Positions 1-62,055 of a DNA stretch of 64,000 bases are shown here, in pieces. Numbering within the stretch: position 1 is the stretch's first letter; each line of letters begins with the position of its first letter. Where the stretch lies: the NCBI GenBank assembly GCA_038087875.1, contig CM075979.1:86366001-86430000 (forward strand), given 5' to 3'. The notes beneath the pieces are model-generated. The model ran no database searches. It saw nothing but the letters and a program-made list of their open reading frames with translations, and had not been told where the DNA came from. The translations under genes were made by a program, and so were the position numbers. The stretch comes from Malacoraja senta (lineage: Eukaryota).

Positions 1-557
1 GTGCAGGTGAATTTGACACAGAAGGTTGCAAACAACTAGACATAATTGTGTGTGCATGCCTAGGTCAGTATACGCATCATTCAAACTCCTTAGATAGCAC
101 ATTTATGTTCACTTGAGGCCTGCAGAAAATTTAATCATAAGATATATGTATACCCATTGATTGTAAAATGATTGTAAAACCTTGGATTTGGAGGCATTTT
201 GCAAAGTTGAAGGTACTTCTGAAGGAAGAAGTCTTGTCTTGTGACCTAGGGTCCAAGATGATTTGTTTTCTTTTGTTCATCTCTGCGTTTTTTTTCCCCT
301 TCCCCAACTCCAAAGCCTCTAACATCCAATCCTATTGCTTGTCACTGCCCTTTTGATACCAAATAATGTGAAATGTGCAAGTCCCAATCAGTAGCATCTG
401 ATGCCTTGCTCCTCGGGCACAGCACTGAGTTCTGCACATTTACCCATTTACCCTAGTACCTTCCCTGGTACTAAAATGTTTGAGCCATTAAGTTTGTCTC
501 TGTTGGTATTTTAACCAATGTTAATATGTAAAGATGCTTTGCTGAATTATATTTCAG

Positions 558-581
558 GCAGAGTCTTTAGTATGGCTGCTT
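558..581 (+). CDS. WNK1: Candidate WNK1 alternative microexon (24 nt, phase 1-1; xRVFSMAA+T)
   Basis: tatatttcag|GCAGAGTCTTTAGTATGGCTGCTT|gtgagt. It is a multiple of 3, stop-free in the phase-1 frame of the downstream WNK1 exons, and has UGC motifs just upstream of the acceptor. Confidence 0.4.
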
Positions 582-2843
582 GTGAGTTGACATTGAATCT
601 TGTGACACAATGCCATTTTCACAATACTCGGCGAAACAGATCATTGTAAGGCATTGCTGGGCATCTACAGCCATGCGGAAAAAGACTGAATCAGAACATT
701 AACGTGAAAAGGCAGATACAGAACTCCTTAGTTGCATCCGTTTTGACGGAGTATTTTGCTGCAAAGTAACTCTAGCTTTTGTGAGTATTTTGAAACTATG
801 CTTTTTCTTAAAGAGAAAAGTTAATTGGTCAAAATTACCTTTTTTTTTAATGGATACCCGGTTTTAGCTCTTTGGATATTTTGTCCAAAGTTTAATGATG
901 TTTTACTATTGAGTGTACCTCAACAGCTACTGCATCGTTTGAGTTCACACAAAAACTAGCAGCATGGTTTGTTGCTGAGAGCTTGCAATTTAGCAAGCTT
1001 AAATTCTGCAATAACCAACTTAAAATCCCTGTGTTTCAGATGAGCTATAGATAATTAATGCAATTTTCCATGACATTGATTTATTAAAATTCAATGCTGT
1101 AGTACACTAACATCTGCTTTTGTAATCATTATAACTGTTGGTGGCCCTTTGGGGGTTGAGATAAAAACAACACTAACTCAGAGAAAGGTGTTGGTCGTTT
1201 GAATCATAACAGCTACATTAACACGGGAAAAATGACAGAATTTTCTTTAAAATACAATTGAAATTTTTGGTTGGGGGAACAAATTCCCATTTGGAATCTG
1301 GTCTTGGTGTGCAAAACTAAAGCATCTTTTCTTCTCCCAAGTTATAAACCTTTCTTTAGGCTACTGTAGAATCCTTGCATTATTGCAGTATTCTCATTTC
1401 AGAACCTTCCTGTGATAGTAGTAGGTCACCTTTGGACATTGGTAGGTCAGTATTCCAATTCTTGTCCTGAAACTTTTAATAGGAAAGGCTAGCAATGTTT
1501 TAAAATTTCCATGCATTGCATGGCAACTCTTTCTTTCAATAAGTTTTTGACCATTTTGTTTTTTGTTGCTGTTGTTGACTAGAAACATCATTAGAAAAAG
1601 CCCCCTTGTCCTTTATTCATGCCAGGTTTCTGTTTTAAAATTAACAAAATCTGAACTTTAACAAAAAACTTAAAATATGCTTTTGTTAATCTAATTGTAA
1701 TAAAATCTTTAATGTGTTTTTAATAAAACATTTGTGTTTGGGCATTCCATCTGCCAGTGGTCAATTTGTTTCAAAACTAAATTTAAGCCTAGATACTAGA
1801 TATTTGTACCATAGTTCCGATTTCAGCAACAATGGTGTAATACAATGAATGATTTGTCTTCTCTCATATCATAGTTGCATATAAATATGGAATAGTTTAG
1901 CTTAATTAAAACACCAAGATACTGTAATCAATCAAGTGTAAGCTTACATCCTTTAACCATATGGTTTTACCATACATTAGTCAAAAGAGTTCACACTAGT
2001 TCCCCTGAATTAATTTGTCTGTCCTCCCTCCTTCAAAGTACATTTTCAAGTGGTTTGCTAACATAATTGTACAGTTCAATTAATGAAAAGGCAAGAAATT
2101 TGTCTGGATAGGCTTTACAAAAGAAGCTTGATCTGTAATTTTACATGAATCACCCTGCCTCACTCTTCCATCTTCTCTGGCACTCTTCACTTGTTCACAT
2201 TTAGTCAGGAACTTACTGTTTACTTAGTTGTTGCACAATTATACAAGTGTGATATATGGATATATTGCAGAAGTAAAGCAGGCTTGTGGTGAGAGAGAGA
2301 GAAAGAGATAGGGAAGGGGAAAGTCAGATCAAGATTAGATGACAATGGTTGAGTTCTCTGGCTAATTTGCTGTCCTGAAAAACAGATCTGGGTGTTTTAA
2401 TTTAAGACTTCCTGTTAAATCCTTACATCAATTCCATGGGGGTATTTGGAATCATTGTAATTCAGTACAAAAAATGCAAAGAATGATACTTGTTACTGAA
2501 ATAATGCCGTGCCATATGTTCCACAAGTTCACTAAATTTCAATATTTCTGCATAAATTGAAAATATGGGTAACATACACTAGATGAGAATTGACTTTACT
2601 ACTTGACTTGGTGTGTGGTGGAATGCTCCAGTCATTTTCCTGATTTGCGAAAACACTTTGAATCCCACAGGCTGGTATGGATGCAGGTCCAGTGGACTTT
2701 TATCTCTGCTAATCCTAGTGCATGTCAGTTTAAATGTTCAACAAAGCAGCATGGCTTCCTACGAGTTTACATCTCATGGAAGTTGTTTGATTACAGCTTT
2801 CTTACCGTCTTGGTCTCAATTTTCTGATCTTTCCACTATCTAG

Positions 2844-2852
2844 CAGCTCTGT
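2844..2852 (+). CDS. WNK1: Candidate WNK1 microexon, 9 nt (2844-2852) or 6 nt (2847-2852) via a NAGNAG acceptor
   Basis: ttttctgatctttccactatctagcag|CTCTGT|gtaagt: pyrimidine tract, tandem tag/cag acceptors and a consensus donor. In phase 1 it gives (x)A-L-W or (x)L-W joined to KMVKK, resembling the ...ALWKMVKK junction I recall from long mammalian WNK1 isoforms. Confidence 0.5.
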
Positions 2853-3204
2853 GTAAGTAACTTCATATTACAAGCAAGCATTGTGGTTATTGAAGCTTAA
2901 AGAGGGAATAAATATATTGGATGGTAACTTTAACATATGGTGCATAAAAGACTGTCTTTACCTTTTCCTTAAGACATTTGGAAATGGTCAAGGCAAATTT
3001 ATTTTGCAGCACTTTCTGATAATAAACTCAGCATTTTTAGTTTACTGATTATATGAGAGAAGAATTTTTGCAAATTACATTAATGAAAAACTAATTTAAA
3101 ATACACGTCTTAAATTTTACTTCCAAGCTAAAGTGTTGTTTGGCACAGCAAACTATTATTTTCACACTGATATACTAAAATGATACCCATGAATTGATAG
3201 ACAC

Positions 3205-3537
3205 AGTTATAGAAAGATACACTATGGAAACAGACCCTTCAGCCCACCGTGTACACTACTACTGTGATTTAGATAAATGCTGCATTATTCCATTTTTAAA
3301 TTCTCCCTAATTCTTGTCAACTCCTTGCAGATTTTATCATTTACCTGCACACTAGGGGCAATTTACAATGGGATTTAGCCTACTCGCTAATTGGGATGTG
3401 GGAGGAAACCAAAGCACAGAGAAGAAACTTGGGTCAGAGGCGGAACATGCAGATTCCAGACATAGCACCCATGGTCAGAGTTAACTGGGGTCTAACACTG
3501 AGGCAGTGGCTCTATCAGCTGTACTTCTGCAATGCCC
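3205..3537 (-). mobile_element. Degenerate HE1-type V-SINE
   Basis: The reverse complement resembles the SINE at 49208-49517 (gggca.. tRNA-like head, ttcctcccacatccc V-domain, gaagggtctgtttcc LINE-derived tail). Confidence 0.6.
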
Positions 3538-4356
3538 ATAGGATGCTGATAACACCTTTTTAGAATCTGGTATGAAATTAATCTGATTGCTAAATGACTC
3601 TTCCCTACAACGCATTTATTTTCTGTCGTCCCCTCATTTTGACCCTCCTGGTTTTCATTAGAGAATTGGGTGCATTGGACTTGATGATATTATTGTTCTA
3701 TAAACAGATTCAGATTCTGCCTGAATTAGCTAACAATACACAACTTGCATTATATATGGCATAGAGAGACACACAAACGATGGCCGTTTAAAATTATTTG
3801 TCTGTGATCTTGAACGGAATGTGTTCCTTCTTGACCACAGCCTACCCAAAGTATGTTTGCTGTTTCCAGTTTGCTGGTTTATTACAACACTAAGGCAGCA
3901 ATTGAGAGAAAAATAATTTTCTTTGGTATATGCGACCTGACCATTGTATCGTGCTGCAGAGCAGTTGCGTTGTATAGAGTACAGATAATGAAATAAAGAT
4001 CAATAGGGAAACTGTAAGTTTTATGTTCTGAAAACTAGGAGGCAATTTTTTGTTTAATTGAATAATTGGTTTTCTATTGCTCCAAATTTGTAATTGTCAA
4101 GCTGTTAAAGGTTGCATGACTAATAAAATGTTGTAATGGGTTCGAAGAAGTATACTTGCTTTTTACTAAAATTACTGTTTAATGAGGCTCTCACTTCCTG
4201 GATTTTGCACATATGCACTGAATGATAACCATTTGCTTCCTCTTTGATTTTACTGTGACAGAATCCCATATCACACAAATCAATTCAATTGATATTAATG
4301 TACTTTTTCCCATTCTGTATGTTTCTCTTCTCCAAGCACTTTTCTTTATTCTTTAG

Positions 4357-4398
4357 GGAAGATGGTGAAAAAAGTCTGCCCATGCAACCAATTGTGTA
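4357..4398 (+). CDS. WNK1: WNK1 alternative small exon (42 nt; xKMVKKVCPCNQLC), exon-26b-like
   Basis: tttctttattctttag|GGAAGATGGTGAAAAAAGTCTGCCCATGCAACCAATTGTGTA|gtaatt. The peptide matches the KMVKKVCPCNQLC insert I recall from neural mammalian WNK1 isoforms, and phase 1-1 joins the next exon in frame. Confidence 0.85.
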
Positions 4399-4907
4399 GT
4401 AATTATCCTTTTCTCATGTTTTACTTCGCATGTGACACTTTGATATTATAATCCTTGCAACTGACTTTAGCAGTTCAGCTCATGCGATTTATTTTGAGGT
4501 TTCTACAACATTAAGTGTATGGGAGGGCAAATTTGCTTCTTTCTGTTGCTTGATGTAAAGCAATGTTAGAATAGATTTTTCCGATTGGCTTTATGGCTTA
4601 TTTTGAAAGAATATGTAGACTTAAAATTTATAATACATTTATTTTTATAGATTAGCAAATTGAAATGTAATCTGAAATAAAAATTAAAAACATTTCCCAA
4701 CCTTTCATTTGAAAGTAATCCTTGTCCATGACAAAATTTTAAGTGAAATAATAAATAAATTGATAAATAGTATCACTAGTAGTGTTTCCTCCCCCACCTC
4801 TACCCCAAAAACCTCATCCCTTGCTCACATGCTGAACTTAGCTGGCCAATTATCAGATACGACAAAACCTATAATGCTGAAGTCAAGTGTAAAGATAGCT
4901 TTGGTCT

Positions 4908-5142
4908 TGCATGTGCTAAGAGCTGATTAAGTTGTGAATGTGGATTAATTTAATGTTTTGTTATCTGGGTGCATTGCATGCTCAATGCAACTTGGCTTTA
5001 ATACATCCTTGAGTCACCTGCAAGCAGTAGAGAAAGATTGCATGAAGCCTTTATTAAAAAATGGCTTAACTAATAAACTTGTACATACAGTTCCTCTATT
5101 CTAACACAAACGTAGACCATACAGTCCGAAGTGGGATGCATG
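4908..5142 (+). promoter_or_regulatory. Cluster of four RBFOX motifs (TGCATG), putative intronic splicing enhancer
   Basis: TGCATG at 4908, 4975, 5039 and 5137; also GCATG at 4428 and TGCATG at 4113. The cluster lies downstream of the 42-nt exon. Confidence 0.6.
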
Positions 5143-5560
5143 ATATGAATGTAAGAATTACAGGCAAATTCTTTAGCTTTGTTCAGGGTCTCTGCACAAT
5201 AGTCTGGATCCATTAACGGATCACCTTCAGAAGATATTAGTCAAACTTGTCACCTTTCTTTAACTGATTCAATTCAACAACAACAAAAAAACACTTAAAT
5301 TACATCCTTTATGAAGAGAAACACACGAGTTGCTTAAAACCATCATTAACCTTTGTTGCGGAGTGACAAGAAAATAGCATTCATCTTTATTGTTTGTGAT
5401 AAATTCTAGTAATGTTTGGTATGTATCAAGAACAAGTATAGGAAGCCATCAAACAAAGTTATCGTCTAGTATTAAAATATCAGCAAGTTATTTTTCTTTT
5501 ATTTGAGAACTCTGATCATAATTTCGAAAAATTAATTTGATCAACTTTCTATTTTGCCAG

Positions 5561-5751
5561 GGACAACTAGCACAAATGCAGTAAGTGGGGTTGGGCAAAT
5601 GCCCCAACAACCAGCAATGACAAGCAGAAAAGGCACCTTCACAGATGATTTGCATAAGTTGGTAGATAATTGGGCTCGAGATGCGATGAACCTTTCACAG
5701 AACAAGCGTGGTATAAAGCAGCAGGGTCAACCAGGCCAGCATTATTCTGAA
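5561..5751 (+). CDS. WNK1: WNK1 penultimate coding exon
   Basis: ttttgccag acceptor and GAA|gtaagt donor. Encodes GTTSTN...RKGTFTDDLHKLVDNWARDAMNLS, the conserved WNK C-terminal motif. Confidence 0.95.
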
Positions 5752-5984
5752 GTAAGTAAGCCTGCCGTTCATGCTTAGAAATAGTTTTAAAAGGTGTGTC
5801 ATTGGCCTCGCTGAGAGTGCTGATATTGAGTTAAATGACCAGTTGATTTGTTTTCCAGAATGTGTATCTTGAGGTGGGAATGTTAATTGGGATAACAGGA
5901 AGGATTTGGGTCTTGAAAAGCTGCCATATAGCTTTCCACTTTTTTAAAACTTGGGTGGAATTGGAGACAGGGCCTGCAAGGATG

Positions 5985-6420
5985 CATTCTCAGCCCCATA
6001 GTATGTTCCCCATTCACTCATGACTGATGCCAAATTCTGCTCTATCTTCATTTACAAATTTGTAGATGACACCATTGTAGTTGGCCTTATTGAGACAGAG
6101 TACAAGAAGGAGATAGCGTTTAGTAACATGGTGTTCGGACAACGCCCACTACCTCAGTGTCAGCAAGATAGAATGAATTATGGACTTGGGGAAGCAAGGT
6201 GGTGTACACTTCCAAGCCAGGATCAATGATGCTGTAGTGGAGGTGGTTGAGAGCATAGAATTCCTCGGCGTATATAAAGCACAAATTTGTCCTGAACATT
6301 GAAGCCACAGCCAAGAAAACACACCGATAGCTTTACTTCCTCGGAAGACCACGGAAGTCCTGCGTGCATCCATCTTACACTTGCCAACTTCTACAGGATG
6401 CAGCGAAGTATCCGATTGGA
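5985..6420 (+). mobile_element. Decayed non-LTR retrotransposon RT fragment (Rex1/Babar-like)
   Basis: Translates to YKFVDDTIVVGLI..ETEYKKEI (KFADDT-like RT motif), with frameshifts. Confidence 0.6.
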
Positions 6421-6740
6421 ATGCAAAAAATTGAAGTATGCTCTGTCCAGCACGCAAAAAAGAGCTATTCATTATATCTCCTTATACTTGCCAAAAATAT
6501 ACTAATACTAATACCAATACAGATACTGAAGTTTCTTTTGTAGATTCTGTGGCAAACTGCAGGATTCGTATGTTAGATTGAAAACTCATCAGGACATTCC
6601 TAATTTACTAGAAGCAGCTCTAAACCTTGCCCTTTGAACCACCAATTAAAACCATTTCAGAATTATTATTTTTAGAGGTGTCATTAGTTTTTTCATAGGT
6701 AGCTATTCTATTAATGCTGTTTGTTTATAACGTTTTACAG

Positions 6741-7061
6741 ACAATGCCGAGGAAGTATTCAGCACCAGGTCAACTTTGCGTCTCCATGACCAATTCTGTG
6801 GGAGGACCTTCTATTTCTGCTTCCTCAGTGGGTTCACTGGGTCCTTTCAGCAAGACTCCTCTCTGCCAGTATGGTTATCCTGGAGCGCCATATGGAGCTC
6901 AGTGGACTGGAGCACCTCCCCAACAGCAACCAGGCATTATAGCACCAACGGCTGGCCTCCAGTTTCAAGGAGTTGGTGCCACATCACTACAGAGCTTTCC
7001 CTTGGGTACTTTGCAGAAATCTGTCAGCAGCCCTACCGGATCCAATCTTAGGACAACGTAG
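6741..7061 (+). CDS. WNK1: WNK1 last coding exon
   Basis: cgttttacag acceptor. Encodes TMPRKYSAPGQLCVSMTNS...LQKSVSSPTGSNLRTT*, matching the WNK1 C-terminus (RKFSAPGQLC...SNLRTT). Confidence 0.96.
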   Translation, partial: TMPRKYSAPGQLCVSMTNSVGGPSISASSVGSLGPFSKTPLCQYGYPGAPYGAQWTGAPPQQQPGIIAPTAGLQFQGVGATSLQSFPLGTLQKSVSSPTGSNLRTT

Positions 7062-10000
7062 ATTCTAGTTCTGGATAAGTGTGATCAATAGACTGAGTGG
7101 AATTCAAGGTTAAATGCCTCTGCTGATGTTGCCAGGGCTAGGTCATAGAGCTTCAAAGCATACAAATGGCTGACACTGCTTTTATATACACAGCATCATT
7201 GAGAGCTATTTTACTAGTTCTGTTTCAAACAGCGTTCTGTGCGGACATGTATTTACCCATCAGTTTTTGATGTTCAAACACTGTGATATATAAATGTTGT
7301 TGGACAACAGTAGTTTAAAGTGGATTTAGAGGGTTGAAAGTTTTAAAGAAAAACATAAAAAAAACTAAAGCTAGCTATAATCCATACTTATCAGAGACAC
7401 TTTAACTTCCTTTGTTACTTCATTGTATTAGATAAATAAATGTGAATGTAAAATTGTATAAATGTACTTGAATACCTGTTTTCCCAGTATGCTTGCTGGA
7501 TTCATAGTGCCTTGTATTGTGCTTCTGACTTGTCTGCAGGAAAGCACTTAGTGTCCCCAACAGAGAAAATAAAGAGGAAGAGAGCAAGTGAAGATGGAGT
7601 TGTGGTAATGTGAATAGTTACACTTGTTCTTTAACAGAGCTATTGTCACAGGCAGTGACTGAAATGCCATCCATTCCCCTTAATCTGTTCTTGTCTTCAT
7701 CCTTCCCTCCCCGGTGATAGCCTTTTAATTACTGAAAATGTGGAGCACTTAAGGCCAAGGTAATAATGGTTTAAGTTTTCTCATGTAGTTTAAGGGTCTG
7801 CATTTTCCAGAATTTTCGTCAAGTGCCGTTGCTTCCAAAAATGCATTGGAAAAATCATTTACATTTGATTCTATTAAAGTTCCCAAGTCAAATTTATTAT
7901 TTAATAGTTATCACTATGAATACTGCTGAAATATAATAAAAGCAGCAGTCCTTTTACATACCAGAACATTTCGGGTTCCTTCAAGTGGTATTAAATTGAT
8001 GGAGGAAAATTAGGTTCTGCAAAAAATCCACCATTAATCTTTTAGTGTAATTCATCATTGCAGTTTATTGATCTGTTCGTTTACAGATGACCATGGCAAC
8101 GTTTACTCTGTGGTTGTAGGCTATCACCATTAAAATAACCTTTGAAGCAACACAGAACAATGTTATTCATCTGGATGTATGGGAAGTGTGAAGAGTGTCA
8201 TGGAGAACTTGCAATCACTTCAGGAAGGCCTTTCTGATGCTAACCCTTGGTTTTTCCTAGAATGTAAATCCTGATTTCCAAATGTAATCCTATATTGGTC
8301 ATAATCTATTCAGCTGTGGTGACCAGATTTGGGCCAAGTGCTTTAATTTAAACATCACAAAATTAAAAAGACCGAGCTGATGTAGAGCCATTGATTTCCC
8401 CATTGATATATGTATAAAATAAACAGAGATTTAATTCCTGTAAGAACAGTTACTTGAAAATTTGCGACTTTTTCCATTTCCCCAATCCAGAAAATATTTT
8501 TCCTTCCTCATTTCACATTTCAATGCAAACTACACATTTAGTTTTGTTTTGCCAGGTATTTGCAAAAAAGTGACTCGTAAAGAACTGGTTGAGAGTTATG
8601 TTGCAGTTTATAGTGATATGAAAATAAAAGGACAAATACACAAAATTTGGATGCAAAGGTTGTTTCAGAGAGTTTGTTCTCTGACTTTTATCAAAGAACT
8701 GTTAAAATCCTGCATTTGTACTTGTTACAAACTGCAGTTGAGCACTTTATTTTGATTTTTTTTTCAAGTAAAATTGAGGAAGGTTGCACCATTTATTAAA
8801 ATATTTTTTCAATATGAATGAATGGTTAGTTCTGCTGTAACTGTTACAACAATTCATGGAACTGAAGAATTTTTACTGCAGCACTTGTTGCAGACTATTG
8901 CTGAAAAGTGAGCCTTAAACAATATTGAATAGAGTTGGGAAGCTTAAACTGAAGTTGTAGAAGTAGACATACTATAGCAAATTATTCCATTAGCTCTTGT
9001 TTGAAATACCCAAACTCTAAAAAAAAGCATGCTTTGAAATTAGAGTTCTCTTGTAAAAAGTACCTGTTATGAAGAACACACTTTTCTCTCTAAAGGCTTT
9101 TAATACAAAAAGCTTAGAATTATCGTGTAATTTTATTGTTAGTTGGAAATGTAATGGTATTCTGTACACCTGCTTTGGGGAAGGAGGGGTGGGATTTCTT
9201 TTATTTTAGGCAGATAGGCATGATAATGAGAACTTTTTATTTCTTTGTCTTTGCTTCCCTTTTAATAAAATTTGACGGTATGGGGGAGTTTCAGCAGGTG
9301 CTTTTGTATCTTCTACCCCATGCTTCATCATATTTCTTATTTCTGTATGTGGATTAATTTCTTTAAATCAAAGCAAATAAAGGCAAGTACTACAACCAGT
9401 ATTACTCCTTAGACTGCAATAAACTGTGAAAAGTCCACACAAATACGTTGCTTTTTAAAAAAAGTTGAAAGTATAATTTTTCGATGAGTTATCTGACCTC
9501 TAAAACCCTAGATCTTCTGTGAAATTTGTACTATTTGCATGGGGTTGAGGAGGTGGCTCAAGTTTCTAAATAGTCTTTTTTTCCCTTTGCCCAACTATTC
9601 ACCCCTCCCCGTGAAAAAAACTCCAGTTGATGTAGAATAATATGCAATAAATAATCCTGGGACTGCTATTGAGGATGTTGGTTACTTGGTATTTGTTTTT
9701 GGTTCCTGTTTAAGTACAGGCAGAGAGTTACGAGTTTCAGTACATGTATGCTATTCCTGTGCATATTTTTTATGCAGTTAATATATTCTGTATTATGTTG
9801 CTCTAATTAAGAATTATTCTCATACAACAACTAGAGCAAATAGCAGCTGGTCTTCATTTTATTTTTAATTTGGGTGCAGAGCACATTTCTTTCTCTCCAT
9901 CTCTCCTTGTCTTGGGCTTTTTTAATATTGTGCAAAAAGCTTGATCCATTTGCCATTTCCCTTATGGAAAACAATTGAAAAAATGTACAAATGTTATAAA

Positions 10001-21000: not shown

Positions 21001-24000
21001 TGTCTTCATTCTGCTTGGGGGAATGAAACTCAGATAGTTTACAATGAAACTGAAATATGGAGGCTTAACCAGTTATGGTTTCATGAATCACCATTTAAAG
21101 CAGCAAAGAATATTGGCTAGCACTTGCTGGCAAATGCTAATGGTTCTATATGCAATTAAACATTCCTCAGCCTAAATGATTCCTGGATGATACCAAATAA
21201 TTAATACCGAATGATTAATGATTCCTGGATGATACCGAAGGCCAAACCTTGCTGTCAAGTTTCGCTGGCAAGTCCCTGACTACCATTTGACTTTGGAATC
21301 CAGTAGTAGAATACCTGCTGATCCGCTTCCTTGAACATTTTGCGTTTTACTCGATTCTGGCTTCTGCAGTATTTTTGTGTCTCCCTATCACAGTTCTGTA
21401 TTTTCACACAATTATTTTAAACGGGTGCTGCAAATAAATCCTCACCTGCCTTGGTAGTTTATTAACCATTCGCAGGTACTCCTTATCCAGAATACAATTA
21501 CCCAAGGCATTGCCAAAAGATCTGAAATGAAAAACTCAATTAATGTGAGGATTCTAAGTTACACTGCTACTAACTGAAAGGTACAAAAGCATCGCCAATT
21601 TTCTATCGATGTGCATATTTGTGCATATTAACTGTGCATATTTTCTAACTGACCATTATTTCATTCATTATTCTGTGGTCAATTATTCAGACAGTAGAGA
21701 TGAATAATAAAGTAACCCAGATAAGGTAACAAATGGAACAATGAGCTCCAAGTAGAGCAATTATGTTCCGAAATTATATTTTAATGGAGTGTTAAATGTA
21801 AGCTGCTGAACATCTATCCTTGTCTCTCACTTTCCCCCCTTCAATACATCAATCATTAAATTTTAACCAAGCTATTATCTCCAGAGTTACAACAGTTTAT
21901 TATTTATTAAATATTTTAATTAACATGCAGACAATTAAAACATTTCCCTAAGGATATATATAATCTCATTAACTAGGCTGGGAGCCGAGCATTGAAAATG
22001 TGTCTAGAATTTAACTTTCGTGACCCATGTCTGGGAACTACTTGAAATTTTGCAAAGATTTAGATAAAATATAATTGAGAAGGAAGTCATAACTCGTCAG
22101 TGCCAAAAGTTGCACATTAATTAATTAAGCTAATTAGAAAATGAGATCAAAGTAAACGCCATCTAGTGTTCAATGCTCATATTACTCCATGGGGAGCCTA
22201 ATTCCATGCTGCTGTCTATTTAAACCAGTTATTTGAGACTGAAGGTAGACAAAAATGCTGGAGAAACTCAGCTGGTGAGGCAACATCTATGGAGCAAAGG
22301 AATTAGGCAATGTTTCGGGCCGAAACCCTTCTTCAGACTGATGTGAGGGTGGGGGGCGGGAAGAAGAAAGGAAGAGGAGGAGCCAGAGGGCTAGAGGGAG
22401 AGCTGAGAAGGGGAGGAGACAGTAAGGACTACCTGAAATTAGAGAAGTCAATGTTCATACCGCTGGGGTACAAACTGCCCAAGCGAAATATGAGGTGCTG
22501 CTCCTCCAATTTCCTGTGGTCCTCACACTGACCATAGAGGAGGCCCAGGACAGAAAGGTCAGATATGGAATGGGAGGGGGAATTGAAGTGCTGAGCCACC
22601 GGGAGATCAGGTTGGTTATTGCGAACCGAGCGGAGGTGTTCGGCGAAGCCATTGCCAAGCCGATGCTTGGTCTCACCGATGTAGATCAGCTGACATCTAG
22701 AGGCGCGGATGCAATAGATGAGGTTGGAGGAGATGCAGGTGAACCTCTGCCACACCTGGAAAGACTGCTTGGGTCCTTGAATGAAGTCAAGGGGGGAGGT
22801 AAAGCAACAAGTGTAGCATTTCTTGCGGTTGCAAGGGAAAATGCCCGGAGAGGGAGTGGTTCGGGTGGGAAGGGGCGAATGGACCAGGGAGTTACGGAGG
22901 GAGCGGTCTCTGCGGAAAGCGGAGGAGGTGGGAAGATGTGGCAAGTAGTGGGGTCACGTTGGAGGTGGCGAAAATGACGGAGGATTATTTGTTGTATGTG
23001 ACAGCTGGTAGGGTGGAAGTTGAGGACTAGGGGGACTCTGTCCTTGTTACGAGTGGGGGGATGGGGAGAGAGAGAGCAGTGTCACGGGGTATCGAAGAAA
23101 CCCTGGTGAGAGCCTCATCTATGGTAGAAGAGAGGAACCCCCGTTCCCTGAAGAATGAGGACATCTCCGATGCCCTGGTGTGGAACACCTCATCCTGGGA
23201 GCAGATGTCGGAAATGGTCCAGGTGTATTTGAGTGCCGGATGGAAGTTAGTGGTGAAATGGATGAAGTCAGTGAGTTGTGTGTGGGTGCAGGAGGTAGCA
23301 CCAATGCAGTCGTCGATGTAGCGGTGGTAGAGTTCGGAGAAGGGGCCCTGGTACGTCTCGAACTAGGATTGTTCGACGTACCCTACAAAGAGGCAGGCAT
23401 AGCTAGGGCCCATGCACGTGCCCTTAGCTACACCTTTTATTTGGAGGAAATGGGAGGAGTCAAACAAAAAGTTATTAAGGGTAAGGACCAGCTCCGCTAG
23501 GCGGAGGAGAGTATCAGTAGACAGGGATTGGTTAGTTCTCCGGTCGAGGAAGAAACAGAGGGCTTTGAGACCCTCCTGGTGGGGGATGAAGGTGTAGAGT
23601 GACTGGATGTCCATGGTGAAGATGAGGGGATGGGGGCCTGGAGACGACGGAGAGCGTGTGAGGCGTCTTGAACATAGGTAGGGAGGGATTTGACCAGGGG
23701 GGATAGGATGGAGTCGAGGTATGTGGAAATAAGTTTGGTTGGGCACGAACAGGCAGAAACAAAGGACAGTCAGGTTTGTGGATTTTGGGGAGAAGGTAAA
23801 ATCGGACTGTGCGGGGCTGGGGAACGATGAGGTTGGAGGCTTGGGGGGGCAGGGAGCCGGAGTTGATGAAGTCAGTGATGGTGCTAGAGATAGTGGCCTG
23901 GTGCTCGTCTGTGGGGTCATGGTCCAAGGATGGTCCGGCTCCTGAACCAGCCTAATTAATGGGTGAGGGCAGTTCCTGTGGGTTCCCCCTTTTACTGAAC

Positions 24001-27000
24001 CCCACAGACTGCCAGTGGGCAGAATGGGGGTCATGGCAGTAGTGGGACTGGAGCAGTGCCAGGCTGGGGGAAGGCTAAGGCATCTTCCATGAGATAAAAA
24101 TGCCTAATCCTAACTCGCCCCCCTTCCAGAACTGCCCATGGCTGGAGCTGGAGCTGCTTTGGGGTCGGCTGCGGGCTCCGTGCATGTGGCTGCTCAGCGC
24201 GTCCGCCTCGGCCAGCATGCCCTTCAGGATCATCACGGTGATGGTGGGGAGCACGCCGCCCGGGCCGCCTTCAGCACCCCAATAGCGCCGGCTCCATCAG
24301 TCCGCCCGCTCGTTCGCTGCAACACTGGCCTACCGACAGCCCGACCGATCCTTCGCAGCACTCACCGACCTACCGACAGATCCTTCGCAGCATCCACCGG
24401 CTTACCGACAGCCCGACCGATCCTTCACAGCGTCCACGGACCCGCCCGACAGACCCCTTGCAGCACTGACTGGCGGCTGGACAGCCCGACCGATCCTTCA
24501 CAGCATCCACCGGTGGCCCGACAGCCCGACCAACTCACTGACCGACTGACTGACTGACCGACTTCTGACTAACTGACCGACCGATTAACTCTAATCCTAG
24601 CTCTACATTTTTATTTAACAGTTCACGTCATAACTTTACAAAGATAAATCAATTGTAAAACAAAATTATCAGCAAGGTTAGCATTACCTTTATTCCTTCG
24701 AAACCTTGCTATTGTTTTGATGTAATTAGGAGGCAGCCAGAATGCTCGCTGCCTCGCTACCATGAATCAAAGCGCGTGATTGGTCAATTGGTGTCCGACG
24801 CAATGTCAAACGTGCATTGATTGGACAATTACTATTCGGAAAATTGGAGGTTTGTCTCATATTTAAAAAATATTTGCAGGTATTGTTCTTGACGAGTTTC
24901 AGGTATGATTTCTATAATATTTTTACACAATATGTTAAAAATTCAGGTAGTTACGTGATTCGGTCACAAACTTAAACAAAAAAGCACCTCGGCCCACAGC
25001 CTAAATATGATTCAACAGTTTTAGATCAAATAATTGTTCATTACCTCAAAGATCGCTTCAGTCCATCAGTAACCGCCTCCTTCCTGGCCTTCTCCAGGGA
25101 CATTGCCTTGGATTTCAGTCCTTCACTCACTCCATAACCAACATCTTCATGGAAACACCCATCCTGATTGTCACCAAAGTGTCATACTATTAAAATGCAT
25201 GCAACATTTACAGTATTACACACAATATAATTAAAACCAAAATCAGTACATTGTTCATTTTCTTGCTTTTTGCCAGATAGACAGACCAACATTTAACAAG
25301 CCACTTATACCTTGAGTTGGACCTTTATAAACGCACTGACGCCCACATAAAATTTTCCATTAATGAGATCCACAAAATCTGAAATAAATCAAATAACTAA
25401 ATTAATTCTAAAACAAATATAGATTTATGGTTACACCCAACAGTGTAGTTCCTAATCGTTATGTTACGATGATTGAAATGTTTACTGGATACCATATTTC
25501 TTGGTAAGGTTGGAACAAAATGTCTGAGCTAACAAACATGAAAATAGTTTAGAAACTTAGCAACCCATTTCCACAATTCTGGTATGAACACAAAATCAAT
25601 AATGCTTCAACTCCCAAATATCCATTTAAACTAAACTAGTCTTACTTACCAACATTTTGTTGTGTGATGGAATGGGACCAACCATTATATCCAAAGAGTT
25701 CATTAGCGAGGTTGACAACCCTATGACCCTCGATGTAGCAGACCTGATAATATAGCAATGAGAGGAAACAAATTATTGTCGTCGTAAATTATTTACGCAA
25801 AAGTGGGAAAGATCACATATAAATGAGGGACTTTAAAAAAATAATCTTTTAGAACTTTAGAATAACTGATGAGTTATTCTATATATATTGGTTGATCTAT
25901 TATGCCTGCAAAGCTACAGCGGCGAGAATTGCATTGTTCTAGTTAATATACGGTGAGTATAGAATAAACACCTGACTAATGGAAAAGTATTATTTATGGG
26001 CCGATGTCAACGTAAGTGAAAAGTATTGTGCAACTAATCACTAATGACAGTAAACACTGAAATGAAAATGATTTGACAGGAAAGTAGAGCCGAGAAATGC
26101 AAAAAACACCAAATTCTGAAGCATGAATAGGAAAAAAATGTTTCAACAGGGAAATTAAGTGGGGGACAAAGAAGCAAACAAAATAAGGTCATAAGTGATA
26201 TGAGCAGAATTAGACCATTCGGCCTATCAAGTCTACTCCGCCATTCAATCATGGCTGATCTATAGTATCTCTCCCTCCTCTCCCCATTCTCTTGTCTTCT
26301 CCCCACAACCCCTGACACCTGTAATAATCACAAGAATCTATCTCTGCCTTAAAAATGTCTATTGACGGCCTCCACAGCCTTCTGTGGCAAAGAATTCCTC
26401 AGATTCACCATCCTCGGACGAAATAAATTCTTTCTCATCTCCTTCCTAAAGGAACGTCCTTTAATTCTGAAGCTATAACCTCTAGTCTTAGATTCTCCCA
26501 CTAATGGAAACATCTTCTCCATATCCACTCTGTCCGTGACTTTCACTATTCGGTATGTTATGAGATCCCCCCTCATTATTCTAAACTGCAGCTAGTACAG
26601 GCCCAGTGCCCTCAAACACTGCCGTTAAAATCACCAAAAGCATGTTAGAAATCAGTCACTCATGGTTCTACAAAGTACTGATTCTGTTTGTGCCTTCAAA
26701 TATGCACTTTCATAGAGATGATAATAAAAAGTACACCGGCATATTGAAGAGAAACAGAAAATGCCAGAAATTCTCAATCTGCGAGAAGTTTCAGATCATG
26801 GATGTTGCAAGCAAATACTGACATGGGTTAGCAGTGCAAGTTTAACATTCCTGTTTAGGAATGATCCAATTTCTAAGTACAGGTATTTGGATTCCAGGAA
26901 TTTAGATTCTCAAGCACAAGAATATACTCGGCCTGTAATATTTTTGTAAGAGCATAGAAAACAGGCCCAGACACGTAGAATTTAAGCAAATATGCCAAAT

Positions 27001-30000
27001 GGAGCAAAACAGAAAGCAAGCCTGGCAATCAAACAGAACAGCAACAGTAAATAGTGCAATGAAAATGATTTGGCAAGAAATTAGAGGCCATAAGTACAAA
27101 CAAAAATAATTAAAAATAATTCCATGAATATGAAAAAATAGCTGAGGGAAATAATGTAAAAATTGGGGCGAAAGTGCCAAACAAATAAAAGAAAAACATC
27201 AACAATATTAAAATCATTCCTCCATAATTCTAGTTTTTCTGTGAAAGCTGCCAATTGTTATAAGCGACATCTGGTGGCAAGTGCAAAAGACGACAAATAC
27301 AATTTTTTTAAAGGAACAATTCGACCTGATTGTACCCAGATTCTTGAACACCAGTATATTGTGTACCAGAATGTAAATGTCCCAAATCAAATAACTACAC
27401 CTAAAAGTGGATCACAACTAAATACTTGAATTCAGTTTGAACTAGTGTAGACAACATTTTCAATCATCAATGCAAAAACAAATATATATATATATATATA
27501 TTTGAGCGCACAAGGTTTTGTGTTCCTTGAGAATCCATGGGAAAAAGATGGGCAGATGGAGTATAATATATGAGATGCAAGATTATCCATTTGGTAGGAA
27601 AAAAGAGGAATGTTGTTTAAATTGAGACCACAATGGGATTGTAGTGTTCCCTTATGAAACTTAGTTAACAGACACTTGTCTAATTAATAAGGCAAACGTA
27701 ATGTTGACCTTCTATCACAGGGTATTGAAGTAGGGAAGTCTTGATACAACTATAGAGAATTTGTAACAACAACATATCTGGAGTAAATGCTTACCATTTT
27801 GGACTCTATTTAAGAAGGTAAATTCTTGCTTTGTGGATCCTTGCACTCACCCATGGGAAACATTACAGGATACCAATGCCCATTCTGAAAAACAACCATT
27901 TTATCCTTGCTTGCCAATCTCTTTCCTTAAACTTGTTATTTATCCAAGCTGAGACCAACTCTTCTATTCTACAAAGGTTTAATTTTAATAAACGGTCTCT
28001 AATGTGCTATTTTAAAAATCCACTTGAGCAATATGCACTCCATTCTATTGATCAACCATCTGTTCCTTCTTCGAAAACTTCAATTACATTGTTAAACACA
28101 ATTTTCCTTTTATAATTCCAGACTAGTTCTCAATAATTAGTCTAAACATCTCTAAATGCATATTATATTTTCCCCTGATTATTGCCTAACCATACCCATC
28201 ACTAATATTAAGCTGTTAATAGCTACTAAGCATTGTTACAAAAAAAATCTTATGTGCCATCTTCAATTTACCAGTTCTAATTGTCTTATGCCCCTGTCCC
28301 ACTTAGGAAACCTGAATGGAAACCTCTGGTGACCTTGCCTGCCATCCAAAAATAAATCAAGGTCGAGGTGATCTGCAACCTCCTACCACCACCCACGCAT
28401 ATGTTGAAATCCTTCCTCGACTATGAAGAAAACCTCCTTCGACCTACAGCAACCTCCTTCGACTAATTTGAAAACTGGCTTCGTTAAATTGGTCCACGAT
28501 TGAACAACACCCCCTTCGACCTCATACAACCAAACTGAAAACCAACAACGACCAGCGTCGACTGGTTACAGCTGTTGATCACGTGATGAAATGATGTCAT
28601 GATTGTTTATTTTTTCTTACAATAAAAGCCTCACAGGTTGTTTTAAAAAATCAGTCTGAACCATAAGAGCAGGGAAGGAACAAGTTAGGTGGATGTTACT
28701 AAAAGTGCATCTACTGCTGTCAGCAGCAGCCCTTTTCCTTCATCAGCCTTTCAAGAAAGGCAGAAGGAAAAGCACAAGGGTGAAGAGGAAGCAGAAGAAG
28801 AGGTGTCAGTGGGTGAAGCCCTTCTTGCAAAGAAGATTGATGCTTGGACAGTATGATAACCTGATGAATGTGCTGCAAGAGGATTTGTCTGCATTTAAAA
28901 ACTTTCTACGAATCACCCCTGAGCTGTTTAATGAGCTGAAGGAAACTGTGGGTCCCCTGCTGAAAAAAATGGAGACCTATATGAGGAAGCCACTGGAACC
29001 AGGACTGCGACTAGCCATCACACTCCGCTATTTGGCATCAGGGGACTCTTACAAGAGCCTCAGCTACAACTTTCTTGTAGCCCACAACACCATCAGTAAG
29101 ATTGTACGAGAGACCTGTGAGGCAATCATTAAGGTATATGGGGATAATGTGATTGTCTCCAGCCCTCCCTCACAACCAATTGGGCATCTGCCTCTGATGC
29201 AGTTTCAGAGACTGGTGAGAGGGCTCTATTGCTGCCTTCACATGTGGCAGTGAAGGATGCGATGTTGGTGGGGACATTGACTACCTGCCTGTTCTCCTCT
29301 GCCAGGGGTCTATCATGCAGGGCTACCTCCTCCTGTGGCATGTCCTTCTGCCACTCCTCCTGGGTGTATGGCAGGCCTTTTGGAGGGTTGTGCCCTACCC
29401 CTGCGAGTCTGCCTTATGGGAGCCATCACTTCTACAACTTTCCTCTACTAAAAAGAACTCTGCAACTATGATTGAGCATGACCAGGAGTGACAGAGGTCA
29501 CATGCTTATGTTAATATTAACCTTTTTTTCACCCAGTTTTATTCCACCCGGGAGGTCTTACCTTCGACCTCCCGTGACCACTAGCATCGCAACCGGCTGC
29601 GACTAAAAAATTACCGATTTTTAAAACGGCAACCTATTTTTGTCGAGACTGGTTTTGATTTTGTTGAAATAATCGAAGGAACATAGAAGAAGCCTCAACC
29701 ACGCGGAAACCACTTTCGACCATTAGGGAGAGTGACCAAAACGTCTGGGAACCTCATGGAATCCTTGGGTGCCGGGCAAGGTCACCAGAGGTTTCAGTTC
29801 AGGTTTCCTAAGTTGGACAGGGTCATTACACTACCACATATCTAGGGAACATTAGATGATTATGGCAAGCCATCTCACTATTTCCCTGAACAACTTGGAA
29901 TAAAAACTACCCAATCCTAGACACTTACCTGCAAAAGTACGGCCAACCTTTTCAATACCAATTCTCATACCGATATCATTATTCATTGACTAAGATTTTG

Positions 30001-50341: not shown

Positions 50342-51381
50342 GCCTTTAATATGACATTTTTATTTGTTGCTTTGGCACATAGTTTTACACTCTTTATCAT
50401 TATACTGCACTATTACTTTGTCTTTTCACTTCAGATTTCTAAATTTTCCTTCCCTCAGGGCAATTTAGTTTAAAGCAATGAGTGTTTTCTTCTAAATCAG
50501 CCCAGATTTTGCAGGATAGGAATTGTTATTGGTATTATCCTTGGGGATATCAATTAACTTGAGCTGTCAAATTTATTTTTTCTAGTTTCAAAATGAATTG
50601 CAGGTGTAATCACATTAATCATTGGAAAAGGCTTTGACTTATTTTCAATGGATTTTCCAAGGTACTTCAAACACACCAATGAAATCAGTTAACTATTTTT
50701 CAGCAGTCCAGTGAAAAGATGTTTTTTTGTGGGGTTGCCAAGAATTTTCTCTCTTGCTTGGCTACAGAAACATGACAGACCAAATTTGGTACGTTGGAGA
50801 TATCGTTTTTTTAAAAATTTTTGTTTCCTTTTCTGAAAGCTCCATATTTCAACCCTGGTTAAGGTGCCCAGAATCAGGGATGTCTAATTTTATAAATAAT
50901 TAAATGTTGGGTTTTTAGGACTTTAACTGTCGGCTCATACATCACCGTATTGTTTTGATGCTCTTTGATTCCACAAAGAATTCCAGTAACTGCATGTATG
51001 ATATTCTAATGTTGGGAGATTCATCTGGCAATTAAAAAAAAAATAGCAGGTGTTCACATTTATCCCAATTTCCTTTCTTGATGTGATTTGTTTGGAATAT
51101 GCTTGGTATTTCTGCAGCAGTGGTAAAAAAATGAGCACTTGTTTTATGGTTGCTTAAAGTAACCAACTTGTAAGCTTTTACAGCCTGTGAAAGTGTATGT
51201 AAACTTTATTAATTCTTAAACTTTTGTTTTAAAATAGATTAAATTTCAATGGCCTGGCATGGACGTCATATCATATTTCAATAGAATGTGCTGAATCTGA
51301 CAAACTTGTAAAACTGAAGTCAAGCGGAGAGGATCTAGTTTTGTTTAATTGGTCAAGAACATATTTGAATTCTGTTCAGCT

Positions 51382-52050
51382 ATGCATGGAAGCTCGCGGT
51401 CGGTGTGTAAAGTGGAGCAAAGTAACCAGAGTCCTGGACGCTCACCAAGATTACCAAGGTCACCACGACTGGGCCACCGGCGAACAAACAGCAGTGGAGG
51501 CAATTCTGGTGCTAATGCTGGTAGCGGTGGTGGGAAAACTTTGTCCATGGAGAATATCCAGTCACTGAATGCTGCATATGCTACATCCAGCCCCATGTAT
51601 TTAAGCGATCATGACTATGTTGGTGTAGATTCGCCCAAGACGACCATGACATTGGGTAGAGCTTCTGGACGCTTACCATTCGGTGTTAGGATGAATACCA
51701 TGGGAAGCAGTCCAAACATTGCCACAACTGGTGTGGCTAGTGATGCCATAGCTTTTGGAGAACACCACCTACCGCCAACAAGCTTAGCCTCTACTGTACC
51801 ACATTCATTGCGGCAGGCAAGGGATAATACAATTATGGATCTGCAGTCACAATTGAAAGAAGTCCTTCGTGAGAACGATCTGCTTCGAAAAGAAGTTGAC
51901 ATGAAAGAGGGAAAGCTCAGCTCTTCCATGAACAGTATCAAAACTTTTTGGAGTCCAGAGCTGAAGAAGGAGCGAGCACTTCGTAAAGATGAGGTGGCAA
52001 AGATGACTATTTGGAAAGAGCAATTTCGAGTTCAGCAGGATGAAAATCAG
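51382..52050 (+). CDS. ERC1: ERC1 (ELKS/RAB6IP2/CAST2) first coding exon, 223 codons; exon begins about 51238
   Basis: MHGSSRSVCKVEQSNQSPGRSPRLPRSPRLGHRRTNS..KTLSMENIQSLNAAYATS..SIKTFWSPELKKER..ENQ; CAG|gtggga donor; synteny with WNK1 and RAD52. Confidence 0.96.
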
Positions 52051-61170: not shown

Positions 61171-61587
61171 CACCTTCAGATGACTATTCAAGCATTGCAG
61201 GATGAACTCCGAATCCAGCGGGATCTGAACCAACTCCTTCAGCAGGACAACAGCATCCGAACCAGTGAACCATTTGTCATTGAGTTGACTGAGGAAAATT
61301 TCCATCATCTTCACACTGAACATGAACGTCAGGCGAAGGAGCTATTCCTATTGCGCAAGACTTTGGAGGAAATGGAGTTGCGCATTGAGACTCAGAAACA
61401 AACCCTTAGTGCCCGCGATGAGTCAATTAAAAAACTCCTGGAAATGTTACAGAGCAAAGGACTTTCCTCTAAGGTGACAGAAGAGGACCACGAGCGAATA
61501 AGGCGACTAGCTGAAGCCGAGATGCTTGTGAACCAGTTAGAAAACATCCTTGATCAAAAAGATAAAGAAAATCATCAGCTAAGAGAA
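61171..61587 (+). CDS. ERC1: ERC1 second coding exon (139 codons)
   Basis: ttacag acceptor; HLQMTIQALQDELRIQRDLNQL...ERQAKELFLLRKTLEEMELRIETQKQTL...QLRE; GAA|gtaaaa donor. Confidence 0.96.
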
Positions 61588-62055
61588 GTAAAAGTTATTT
61601 TGTACTATTTGATATATAATGAACTTAATATTGAAAATTCCTTTAAGCCGTGTTAAATATACATTGTCTTCACATTTAATGTGCGTGCACATTTAATATG
61701 TTGTATTGGAAGGAAAAGTTTCCAAATCTAGTTCCTGACACTTAATAAATTTGAGTCATTGTCAGCTGAGATGTAAATCCAACTAAGATTTTCAATTTGA
61801 AAGCTATCTGAAACCTTAGTTGACAAATTGTCCATAGCTGTCATCCACTACAGTATTACTCTGATATTTGTCGTCATATGTTGCTAATATTGTTAAGTTT
61901 ATGAAATAAATGATTTAAATTATGGAACATCATGAAGTACTATCCAAGGGTATAAAAGCCATTGGTTGTCAACTTTACATGAATAATGACCTACTTGCCT
62001 CTAGATCACTATATTTTGGATTCAAATTGCAAATAAGTTGCCTCTAATACTTAGT

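What the first reader, a model, noticed from the sequence alone, without database searches (positions are those of the whole stretch)
558..4398. Combinatorial WNK1 microexon cassette (24 + 6/9 + 42 nt) building a Trp/basic/Cys-rich insert
Seen: three short GT-AG segments upstream of the penultimate WNK1 exon. All are multiples of 3, phase 1-1 and stop-free, so any combination keeps frame. Both upstream ones end in T, turning the first codon of the 42-nt exon into TGG (Trp), giving ...W-K-M-V-K-K-V-C-P-C-N-Q-L-C-R. Knowledge (recalled): the KMVKKVCPCNQLC insert is a neural WNK1 splice form in mammals. Inference: a switchable module retained since the gnathostome ancestor, possibly an S-palmitoylated or amphipathic membrane anchor tuned by microexons too small for gene finders.
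Basis: partly seen in the sequence, partly recalled or inferred. Interest (0 to 1): 0.75.

Follow-up and report, generated by a model that had tools for sequence, protein, structure and literature searches.

The report
Known WNK1 exon 26b plus candidate microexon
In this skate's WNK1 gene, the 42-base segment is the already known nerve-and-muscle exon 26b; of the two smaller proposed exons, one looks like chance and the other sits in deeply conserved intron DNA but has no transcript evidence.

Summary
The window opens inside the WNK1 intron between exon 26a and the penultimate exon, in a skate close to Amblyraja and Leucoraja. All three segments exist as described: AG/GT flanked, multiples of 3, phase 1-1 and stop-free.

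- **4357-4398 (42 nt)** is WNK1 exon 26b, described in 2012 and annotated from chimaera to mammals. A skate RNA contig joins exon 26 directly to it.
- **The Trp in documented isoforms** comes from neither microexon. It comes from a 21-nt extension of exon 26a (alternative donor, 72 to 93 nt, adding STPCLAL plus a final T). This lies about 220 nt upstream of the window. The insert ...RRTRFLSTPCLALWKMVKKVCPCNQLCR is annotated with the same STPCLALW in cartilaginous fishes, bichirs, birds and mammals.
- **558-581 (24 nt)** shows only background conservation. Its acceptor is mutated in other skates, it has no chimaera counterpart, and no annotated isoform contains it. It is most likely chance.
- **2844-2852 (9 nt)** lies in a 300-nt island that is 99-100% identical to Leucoraja and 76% identical to elephant shark. 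The acceptor, the 9-nt length, the final T and the GTAAGTAA donor are all kept. The 6-nt variant is confined to skates. I found no transcript or protein evidence for inclusion.

The cassette idea is therefore only partly supported, and palmitoylation remains untested.

The parts
558..581 (+).
   Evidence: The sequence is present. Its polypyrimidine tract is weak and it fails the strict filter. The acceptor region changes in Leucoraja (TTTCAG to TTAGAG), and local identity is 93%, which is background. In a third skate the acceptor AG is lost (554 T>G, 555 C>G, 556 A>C) and there are 3 changes inside the 24 nt. No Callorhinchus match exists. No annotated isoform contains RVFSMAA.
1415..1923 (+). 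Conserved intronic island 1, with 100%-identical blocks and a conserved UGCAUG
   Evidence: 66% identity over 558 nt to the orthologous Callorhinchus intron, E 7e-49. The alignment shows a 33-nt invariant block and a conserved TGCATTGCATGG.
2584..2903 (+). Conserved intronic island 2, which contains the 9-nt candidate microexon
   Evidence: 99-100% identical to Leucoraja over 2601-2900, against about 94% background. 76% identical over 326 nt to Callorhinchus, E 3e-59, which is stronger than the island around exon 26b. An RNA-run contig of another skate covering 2694-2908 has 0 differences. Two GCATG motifs (2720, 2749) are conserved in Callorhinchus. No Rfam family matches.
2844..2852 (+). Candidate 9-nt microexon (CAGCTCTGT). 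The 6-nt alternative 2847-2852 would use the second AG of tagcag
   Evidence: It has a strong acceptor tract and a perfect GTAAGT donor. Callorhinchus has tctag|CTACTCTAT|gtaagtaa, which keeps the acceptor, the 9-nt length, the final T and the donor. Two of the 3 changes fall at third-codon positions in phase 1. The second AG is absent there. No junction was seen in 4 runs of assembled contigs and no protein fragment includes it.
4357..4398 (+). WNK1 exon 26b (42 nt, KMVKKVCPCNQLC)
   Evidence: 42 nt, as in human and mouse (PMC3365125). The peptide is identical to annotated isoforms from chimaera to mammals. An RNA contig carries the last 25 nt of exon 26 joined at 4357 (exon 26 end verified). 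The exon and its gtaattatc donor are conserved in Callorhinchus and the teleost Albula.
5561..5751 (+). Penultimate WNK1 coding exon (human exon 27 equivalent), phase 1 in and phase 0 out
   Evidence: Translation. 166 of 168 residues (exons 27 and 28 together) match Amblyraja radiata WNK1. Exon 26-to-27 junction contigs occur in two RNA runs.
6741..7058 (+). Last WNK1 coding exon, including the stop codon
   Evidence: Translation ends ...GSNLRTT*. phmmer finds full-length WNK1 proteins.

Best explanation
The first 7 kb of the window is the 3' end of WNK1 in a skate.

**The shown module.** Between constitutive exons 26 and 27 lies a block of alternative, frame-preserving (phase 1-1) exons:
- exon 26a, used as 72 nt or, through a second donor 21 nt further on, as 93 nt; it lies about 220-310 nt upstream of the window;
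- exon 26b, 42 nt, at window 4357-4398.

Every junction splits a codon after its first base. The residue before KMVKK is therefore set by the last base of whichever exon is joined upstream. Exon 26 ends in G and gives Gly. Exon 26a-short ends in A and gives Arg. Exon 26a-long ends in T and gives Trp. These forms are all annotated, and the longest insert (...RRTRFLSTPCLALWKMVKKVCPCNQLCR) is invariant from STPCLALW onward, from chimaera to mammals.

The 24-nt segment is a chance splice-site pair. The 9-nt segment sits in a 300-nt intronic element conserved for roughly 400 million years between skates and chimaera. It is either a real but unannotated microexon that adds (Thr/Ala/Ser)-Ala-Leu-Trp before 26b, or a splice-site-like core of an intronic regulatory element.

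**Inferred only.** Tissue control of this module may come from Rbfox-type GCAUG sites, which are enriched in the intron and conserved within both islands. The protein function of the basic, Cys-rich insert is unknown.
For: - Exon 26b: 42 nt, neural plus skeletal muscle, in frame (PMC3365125). Identical peptide in annotated isoforms. Exon 26-to-26b and 26-to-27 junction contigs in skate RNA runs (checked against Leucoraja exon 26).
- Exon 26a and its 21-nt extension read straight through in Leucoraja, Callorhinchus and Albula genomic DNA. No 26a homologue lies inside the window.
- Five isoform classes are annotated in cartilaginous fishes. The STPCLALW form also occurs in bichirs, platypus, birds and mammals.
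- The 24-nt segment is not conserved.
- The 9-nt segment lies in a conserved island and its splice sites are preserved.
- GCATG occurs 11 times against about 3 expected. The copies inside both islands are conserved.
Against: - No read or contig shows the 9-nt segment spliced into mRNA. However, assembled contigs drop rare forms and aligners cannot place 9 nt.
- The tissue of the RNA runs is unknown, so neural specificity in skates is not shown.
- The island was not found in the one bony fish I could examine, the teleost Albula. Conservation beyond cartilaginous fishes is therefore unknown.
- Preservation of AG-9 nt-GTAAGTAA inside an island that is already 76% identical is only mildly beyond expectation. 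My estimate is about 0.05, from 0.76 to the power of 11.
Confidence: 0.8

Rival explanations
1. One reading: three independent microexons (24 + 6/9 + 42 nt) are combined freely, and the two upstream ones create the Trp before KMVKK.
For: All three are frame-compatible and the upstream two end in T. The 9-nt segment is well conserved.
Against: The 24-nt segment loses its acceptor in a related skate and has no chimaera counterpart. No annotated isoform or protein fragment contains RVFSMAA, or an ALW that does not derive from 26a-long. The documented Trp is fully explained by the 26a alternative donor.
Confidence: 0.06
2. The 9-nt segment is a genuine, very short, tissue-restricted microexon of cartilaginous fishes, and possibly of older origin. 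It lets 26b carry an Ala/Thr-Leu-Trp prefix with or without exon 26a. Annotation pipelines miss it because of its size.
For: It is the only strict splice-site pair in the intron. Acceptor, length, phase, final T and GTAAGTAA donor are kept in Callorhinchus, and 2 of 3 substitutions are synonymous in phase 1. About 250 nt of highly conserved upstream intron is typical of neural microexons (my knowledge of the microexon literature, e.g. Irimia et al. 2014; not checked here).
Against: There is no transcript evidence, and no protein in the 5.8-billion-sequence collection shows it. No UGC motif lies within 60 nt upstream of the acceptor. The two conserved GCATG motifs lie upstream, a position usually linked to repression (my knowledge). 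The substitution pattern is not statistically significant (my estimate, p about 0.26).
Confidence: 0.4
3. The 300-nt island is an intronic splicing-regulatory element that controls neural and muscle inclusion of 26a and 26b. Its AG..GTAAGT core is a decoy or pseudo-exon that binds U1/U2 components without being included.
For: The flanks are more conserved than the 9 nt themselves: 3 of 9 changed in the segment, against about 17% in the flanks. Both islands contain conserved GCAUG motifs. Exons 26a and 26b are expressed in neural tissue and skeletal muscle, which matches Rbfox expression (my knowledge). No inclusion evidence exists.
Against: A regulatory element does not need to keep an exact 9-nt spacing, the reading frame and a terminal T. 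Conservation of a perfect donor argues for spliceosome use.
Confidence: 0.45
4. The 9-nt region is an old local duplicate of the 3' end of exon 26a-long (TTTCTGA ... CTGTCT.GCT.CT.T|GT..GTAA). This would explain why it also reads (C)LA(x)LW.
For: A local alignment of the Callorhinchus 26a-long end against its 9-nt region matches 30 of 41 positions; about 3% of shuffled sequences score as well.
Against: The skate comparison alone is not significant, with 11-17% of shuffles scoring as well. The sequences are short and of low complexity. This origin is compatible with either functional reading above.
Confidence: 0.3

Closest known systems
WNK1 exon 26b (Vidal-Petiot et al. 2012, PLoS One 7:e37751; GenBank JQ358908)
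   Same: 42 nt, located between exons 26 and 27, in frame with no stop. The peptide KMVKKVCPCNQLC is identical. It can be joined directly to exon 26, as reported for the mammalian central nervous system.
   Different: Only the species differs (a skate). Tissue specificity could not be checked here.
WNK1 exon 26a and its 93-nt long form (annotated in NCBI models as ...RRTRFLSTPCLALWKMVKK...)
   Same: This is the documented source of the Trp before KMVKK.
   Different: It lies outside the window, about 220 nt upstream. It is an alternative donor of a 72-nt exon, not a separate microexon. The 2012 paper describes only the 72-nt form.
Neural microexons (3-27 nt) with highly conserved flanking introns
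   Same: The 9-nt segment has the right size, preserves the frame, has canonical splice sites and has strongly conserved upstream intron.
   Different: Inclusion is not shown. The usual UGC enhancer motif near the acceptor is absent. It was not found in the one teleost examined.
NAGNAG tandem acceptors
   Same: The tagcag acceptor at 2841-2846 would give 9-nt and 6-nt versions that differ by one codon.
   Different: The second AG is absent in Callorhinchus (tagcta), so the 6-nt form is at best specific to skates. Its usage is unknown.

Membership tests
WNK1 exon 26b | 42-nt exon within the intron between exons 26 and 27, preserving the frame | tested here: met
   4357-4398 is 42 nt, phase 1-1 and has no stop. 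The paper gives 42 nt.
WNK1 exon 26b | Encodes KMVKKVCPCNQLC | tested here: met
   Identical to annotated mammalian, bird, reptile, shark and chimaera isoforms.
WNK1 exon 26b | Spliced into mRNA | tested here: met
   An RNA-run contig carries exon 26 sequence abutting 4357. The 25 loose letters exactly match the end of Leucoraja exon 26.
WNK1 exon 26b | Expression restricted to neural tissue and skeletal muscle | not testable with these tools
   Run identities and tissues are coded. Two runs of the same study as the run with the exon 26-to-26b junction hold none of the exon's sampled words, which fits tissue restriction but does not prove it.
Neural microexon (9-nt segment 2844-2852) | Length of 27 nt or less, a multiple of 3, canonical AG/GT | tested here: met
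Neural microexon (9-nt segment 2844-2852) | Splice sites and flanking intron conserved across distant species | tested here: met
   Conserved in Leucoraja and Callorhinchus. Not found in Albula.
Neural microexon (9-nt segment 2844-2852) | Inclusion in transcripts | tested here: inconclusive
   No joint or loose end at 2844 or 2852 appears among the rows shown for 4 runs of assembled contigs (24 further loose-end rows were not shown). No protein fragment includes it. Contigs and aligners are poorly suited to a 9-nt exon.
Neural microexon (9-nt segment 2844-2852) | UGC-type enhancer close to the acceptor (SRRM4-dependent class) | tested here: not met
   No TGC lies within 60 nt upstream of 2844. 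The motif definition comes from my own knowledge.
Neural microexon (24-nt segment 558-581) | Conserved splice sites | tested here: not met
   The acceptor AG is lost in one skate and the tract is degraded in Leucoraja. There is no Callorhinchus counterpart.
S-palmitoylated or amphipathic membrane anchor | Cysteines acylated, and membrane association dependent on them | not testable with these tools
   Only the composition can be read: three Cys next to Lys-rich and hydrophobic residues.

The most novel reading that the evidence does not exclude
The 9-nt segment at 2844-2852 is a real, unannotated microexon that has been conserved since the common ancestor of skates and chimaeras, and perhaps of all jawed vertebrates. 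It would give exon 26b its Leu-Trp prefix independently of exon 26a. It may have arisen by duplication of the 3' end of exon 26a-long.
Probability: 0.35. Interest if true: 0.45.

Novelty: already known. Interest (0 to 1): 0.25.

Why it matters
WNK1 isoforms matter for hereditary sensory neuropathy and for ion-transport regulation. The function of the 26a/26b insert is still unknown, although the STPCLALWKMVKKVCPCNQLC stretch is identical from chimaera to mammals in every annotated isoform examined.

This work has three outcomes:
- It corrects the exon map for a cartilaginous fish.
- It shows that the residue before KMVKK (Gly, Arg or Trp) is set by which exon is joined upstream.
- It flags two deeply conserved intronic islands, one with a testable 9-nt exon candidate, as likely controllers of this tissue-specific module.

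The main element was already published and annotated, so the gain is modest.

Tried and rejected
- **Exon 26a inside the window.** I searched for a 26a homologue with tblastn and motif scans and found none. It lies upstream.
- **STPCL as a separate 15-nt exon.** I considered that the annotated STPCLALW might be a 15-nt exon plus the 6-nt segment, and searched the window for STPCL. This was rejected once Leucoraja DNA showed a continuous read-through of 26a.
- **Structured RNA.** The Rfam scan of 1-7300 gave no credible family. The fold of the island has a z-score of 0.13. A predicted long-range helix that would mask the 9-nt segment is no better than many other intronic partners: rank 20 in the skate and rank 181 in Callorhinchus.
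- **Protein fragments.** A search for fragments spanning the junction returned only genomic read-through ORFs and known forms.
- **Metagenome scans.** Two scans, for the island core and for the 9-nt core, gave 0 hits.
- **More genomes.** Amblyraja, Rhinoraja, Chiloscyllium, Pristis, Narcine and Polypterus loci could not be fetched because the gene exceeds 100 kb.
- **Rbfox site near 26b.** The GCATG 30 nt downstream of 26b is not conserved in Callorhinchus or Albula. I do not claim it as a regulator.
Full report
**What is in the sequence.** The three segments exist as described.
- 558-581: 24 nt, cag|..|gtgagt.
- 2844-2852: 9 nt behind a tandem tagcag acceptor, which also allows a 6-nt form at 2847-2852; the donor is gtaagt.
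- 4357-4398: 42 nt, tag|..|gtaatt.

Each is a multiple of three and stop-free when one base of a codon is carried in from upstream. The first two end in T, so joining them to GG.. at 4357 makes TGG. The next exon is 5561-5751 and the last coding exon is 6741-7058, ending ...GSNLRTT*. This is the 3' end of WNK1. The exon 27 plus 28 peptide matches Amblyraja radiata at 166 of 168 residues and Leucoraja erinacea at 165 of 168, so the animal is a skate.

These properties are cheap. The 5.5 kb holds 217 AG..GT, in-frame, stop-free segments of 60 nt or less, and 82 of them end in T. With a strict filter (pyrimidine-rich acceptor and consensus donor), only the 9-nt and 6-nt pair survives. The rest of the window gives 0.35 such candidates per 5.5 kb.

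**The 42-nt segment is exon 26b.** Vidal-Petiot et al. 2012 (PMC3365125) described two exons in intron 26 of human and mouse WNK1: 26a (72 nt) and 26b (42 nt). Both are frame-preserving and expressed only in neural tissue and skeletal muscle. Exon 26b can occur alone, whereas 26a occurs only together with 26b.

Annotated WNK1 isoforms carry G-KMVKKVCPCNQLC-R between exons 26 and 27 in sharks, rays, skates, chimaera, reptiles, birds and mammals. In one RNA run, an assembled contig carries 25 letters that exactly match the end of Leucoraja exon 26, followed by the sequence from 4357 onward. Two runs also hold direct 26-to-27 junctions. The exon and its gtaattatc donor are conserved in Callorhinchus and in the teleost Albula.

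**Where the Trp really comes from.** Annotated cartilaginous-fish isoforms fall into five classes between exons 26 and 27:
- no insert;
- 26b alone (Gly before KMVKK);
- 26a alone;
- 26a plus 26b (...GGRRTRFL-R-KMVKK...);
- ...GGRRTRFL-STPCLAL-W-KMVKK....

The Leucoraja locus (L001) shows otherwise. Exon 26a is L001 86154-86225. The 21 nt that follow its donor read straight on as S-TPCLAL and end in T before a second donor, gtgtgt. STPCLAL-W is therefore an alternative 5' splice site of exon 26a, taking it from 72 to 93 nt.

Window position 1 corresponds to L001 86467. This module therefore lies about 220 nt upstream of the window, and no 26a homologue is inside it. The extension and its donor are identical at the nucleotide level in Leucoraja and Callorhinchus, and the extension is also present in Albula. 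The full insert ...RRTRFLSTPCLALWKMVKKVCPCNQLCR is annotated in bichirs, birds of prey, ruminants, rhinoceros, primates, rodents and carnivores, and a platypus isoform joins the STPCLALW form directly to exon 27.

Because each junction splits a codon after its first base, the residue before KMVKK depends on the upstream partner:
- exon 26 ends in G, giving Gly;
- 26a-short ends in A, giving Arg;
- 26a-long ends in T, giving Trp.

**The 24-nt segment.** Several results argue against it.
- Against Leucoraja, its neighbourhood is 93% identical, which is the intronic background. The acceptor tract changes from TTTCAG to TTAGAG.
- In a third skate, whose genomic-like contigs are about 5% diverged, the acceptor AG itself is lost (556 A>C, with 554 and 555 also changed). 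Three of the 24 bases differ.
- Nothing in window 1-1414 aligns to the Callorhinchus intron.
- No annotated isoform contains RVFSMAA.

I conclude that it is a chance pair of splice-like sites.

**The 9-nt segment.** This one is different. Between the window and Leucoraja, positions 2601-2900 are 100%, 100% and 99% identical per 100 nt, against about 94% elsewhere. That equals the island around exon 26b. A contig from another skate covering 2694-2908 has no differences.

The orthologous Callorhinchus intron aligns over window 2584-2903 at 76% identity (E 3e-59). This is better than the 26b island, at 72% and E 3e-34. In Callorhinchus the core reads tctag|CTACTCTAT|gtaagtaa.
- The first acceptor AG, the 9-nt length, the terminal T and the extended donor are all kept.
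- The second AG is not kept, so the 6-nt form is at best specific to skates.
- Two of the three substitutions fall on third codon positions in phase 1. The first codon stays Thr, Ala or Ser whichever upstream exon supplies its first base.

If used, the segment would insert (T/A/S)-A-L-W in skates and (T/A/S)-T-L-W in chimaera before KMVKK.

Against this, four points weigh:
- There is no inclusion evidence. The rows shown for four runs of assembled contigs hold no joint or loose end at these positions. No protein in the large collection shows it.
- The flanks are more conserved than the 9 nt themselves.
- No UGC motif lies near the acceptor.
- The island was not found in Albula.

Preservation of AG plus GTAAGTAA plus the terminal T inside a 76% identical island is only mildly unexpected. 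My estimate is about 0.05.

I therefore leave two readings nearly level: a genuine unannotated microexon (about 0.40), or a splice-site-like core of a regulatory element (about 0.45).

A second island, 1415-1923, is also conserved with Callorhinchus. GCATG is enriched in the intron, with 11 copies against about 3 expected. The copies inside both islands are conserved. This fits Rbfox-type control of exons that are expressed in neurons and muscle. That link is an inference.

**Other tests.**
- Rfam gave nothing credible, and the island is not unusually structured.
- A predicted helix pairing the 9-nt segment with an upstream conserved stretch is not exceptional among intronic partners.
- The 9-nt region weakly resembles the 3' end of 26a-long, at 30 of 41 positions in Callorhinchus; about 3% of shuffled sequences score as well. 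This could reflect an old duplication and would explain the shared LA(x)LW reading. The evidence for it is thin.

**Function of the insert.** Nothing here tests palmitoylation or membrane binding. Only the composition can be read: Lys-rich, hydrophobic, and three Cys in 26b, with further Cys and His in 26a. The extreme conservation shows strong constraint but does not reveal the function.

**Verdict.** The core element is already published and widely annotated. The combinatorial three-microexon cassette is not supported as stated. The one open and mildly novel item is the conserved 9-nt candidate and its island.

Noticed in passing
window 1415-1923: A second intronic island is conserved with the orthologous Callorhinchus intron (66% over 558 nt). 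It includes a 33-nt invariant block and a conserved TGCATTGCATGG. It is probably a splicing-regulatory element for the 26a/26b module.
   Followed up: partly
L001 86226-86262 and L002 90999-91035 (upstream of the window): The 21-nt extension of exon 26a and the 16 nt after its distal donor are identical at the nucleotide level between a skate and a chimaera, synonymous sites included. This implies a constraint beyond protein coding.
   Followed up: partly
window 1-5560: GCATG (the Rbfox core) occurs 11 times against about 3 expected from base composition. The copy 30 nt downstream of exon 26b (4428) is specific to skates.
   Followed up: partly
window 3212-3428: Very high contig depth (up to about 536, against 15-22 in the flanks), with many loose ends and skips in all four runs. 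This indicates an interspersed repeat copy inside the intron.
   Followed up: no
window 51349-52074 and 61180-61653 (+): ORFs match the N-terminal part of the Cast/ELKS family (Pfam PF10174; E 5e-32 and 8e-52). The neighbouring gene is therefore ERC1-like, as it is next to WNK1 in mammals (synteny from my own knowledge).
   Followed up: partly
window 28693-29250 (+): An ORF has a weak match to the helix-turn-helix of DDE (Harbinger-type) transposases (PF13613, E 0.006, below the curated cutoff). It is probably a transposon remnant.
   Followed up: no
window 22400-24600, both strands: A GC-richer stretch carries several overlapping long ORFs on both strands and a proline-rich, repeat-like translation. 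One ORF tested against Pfam had no match.
   Followed up: no
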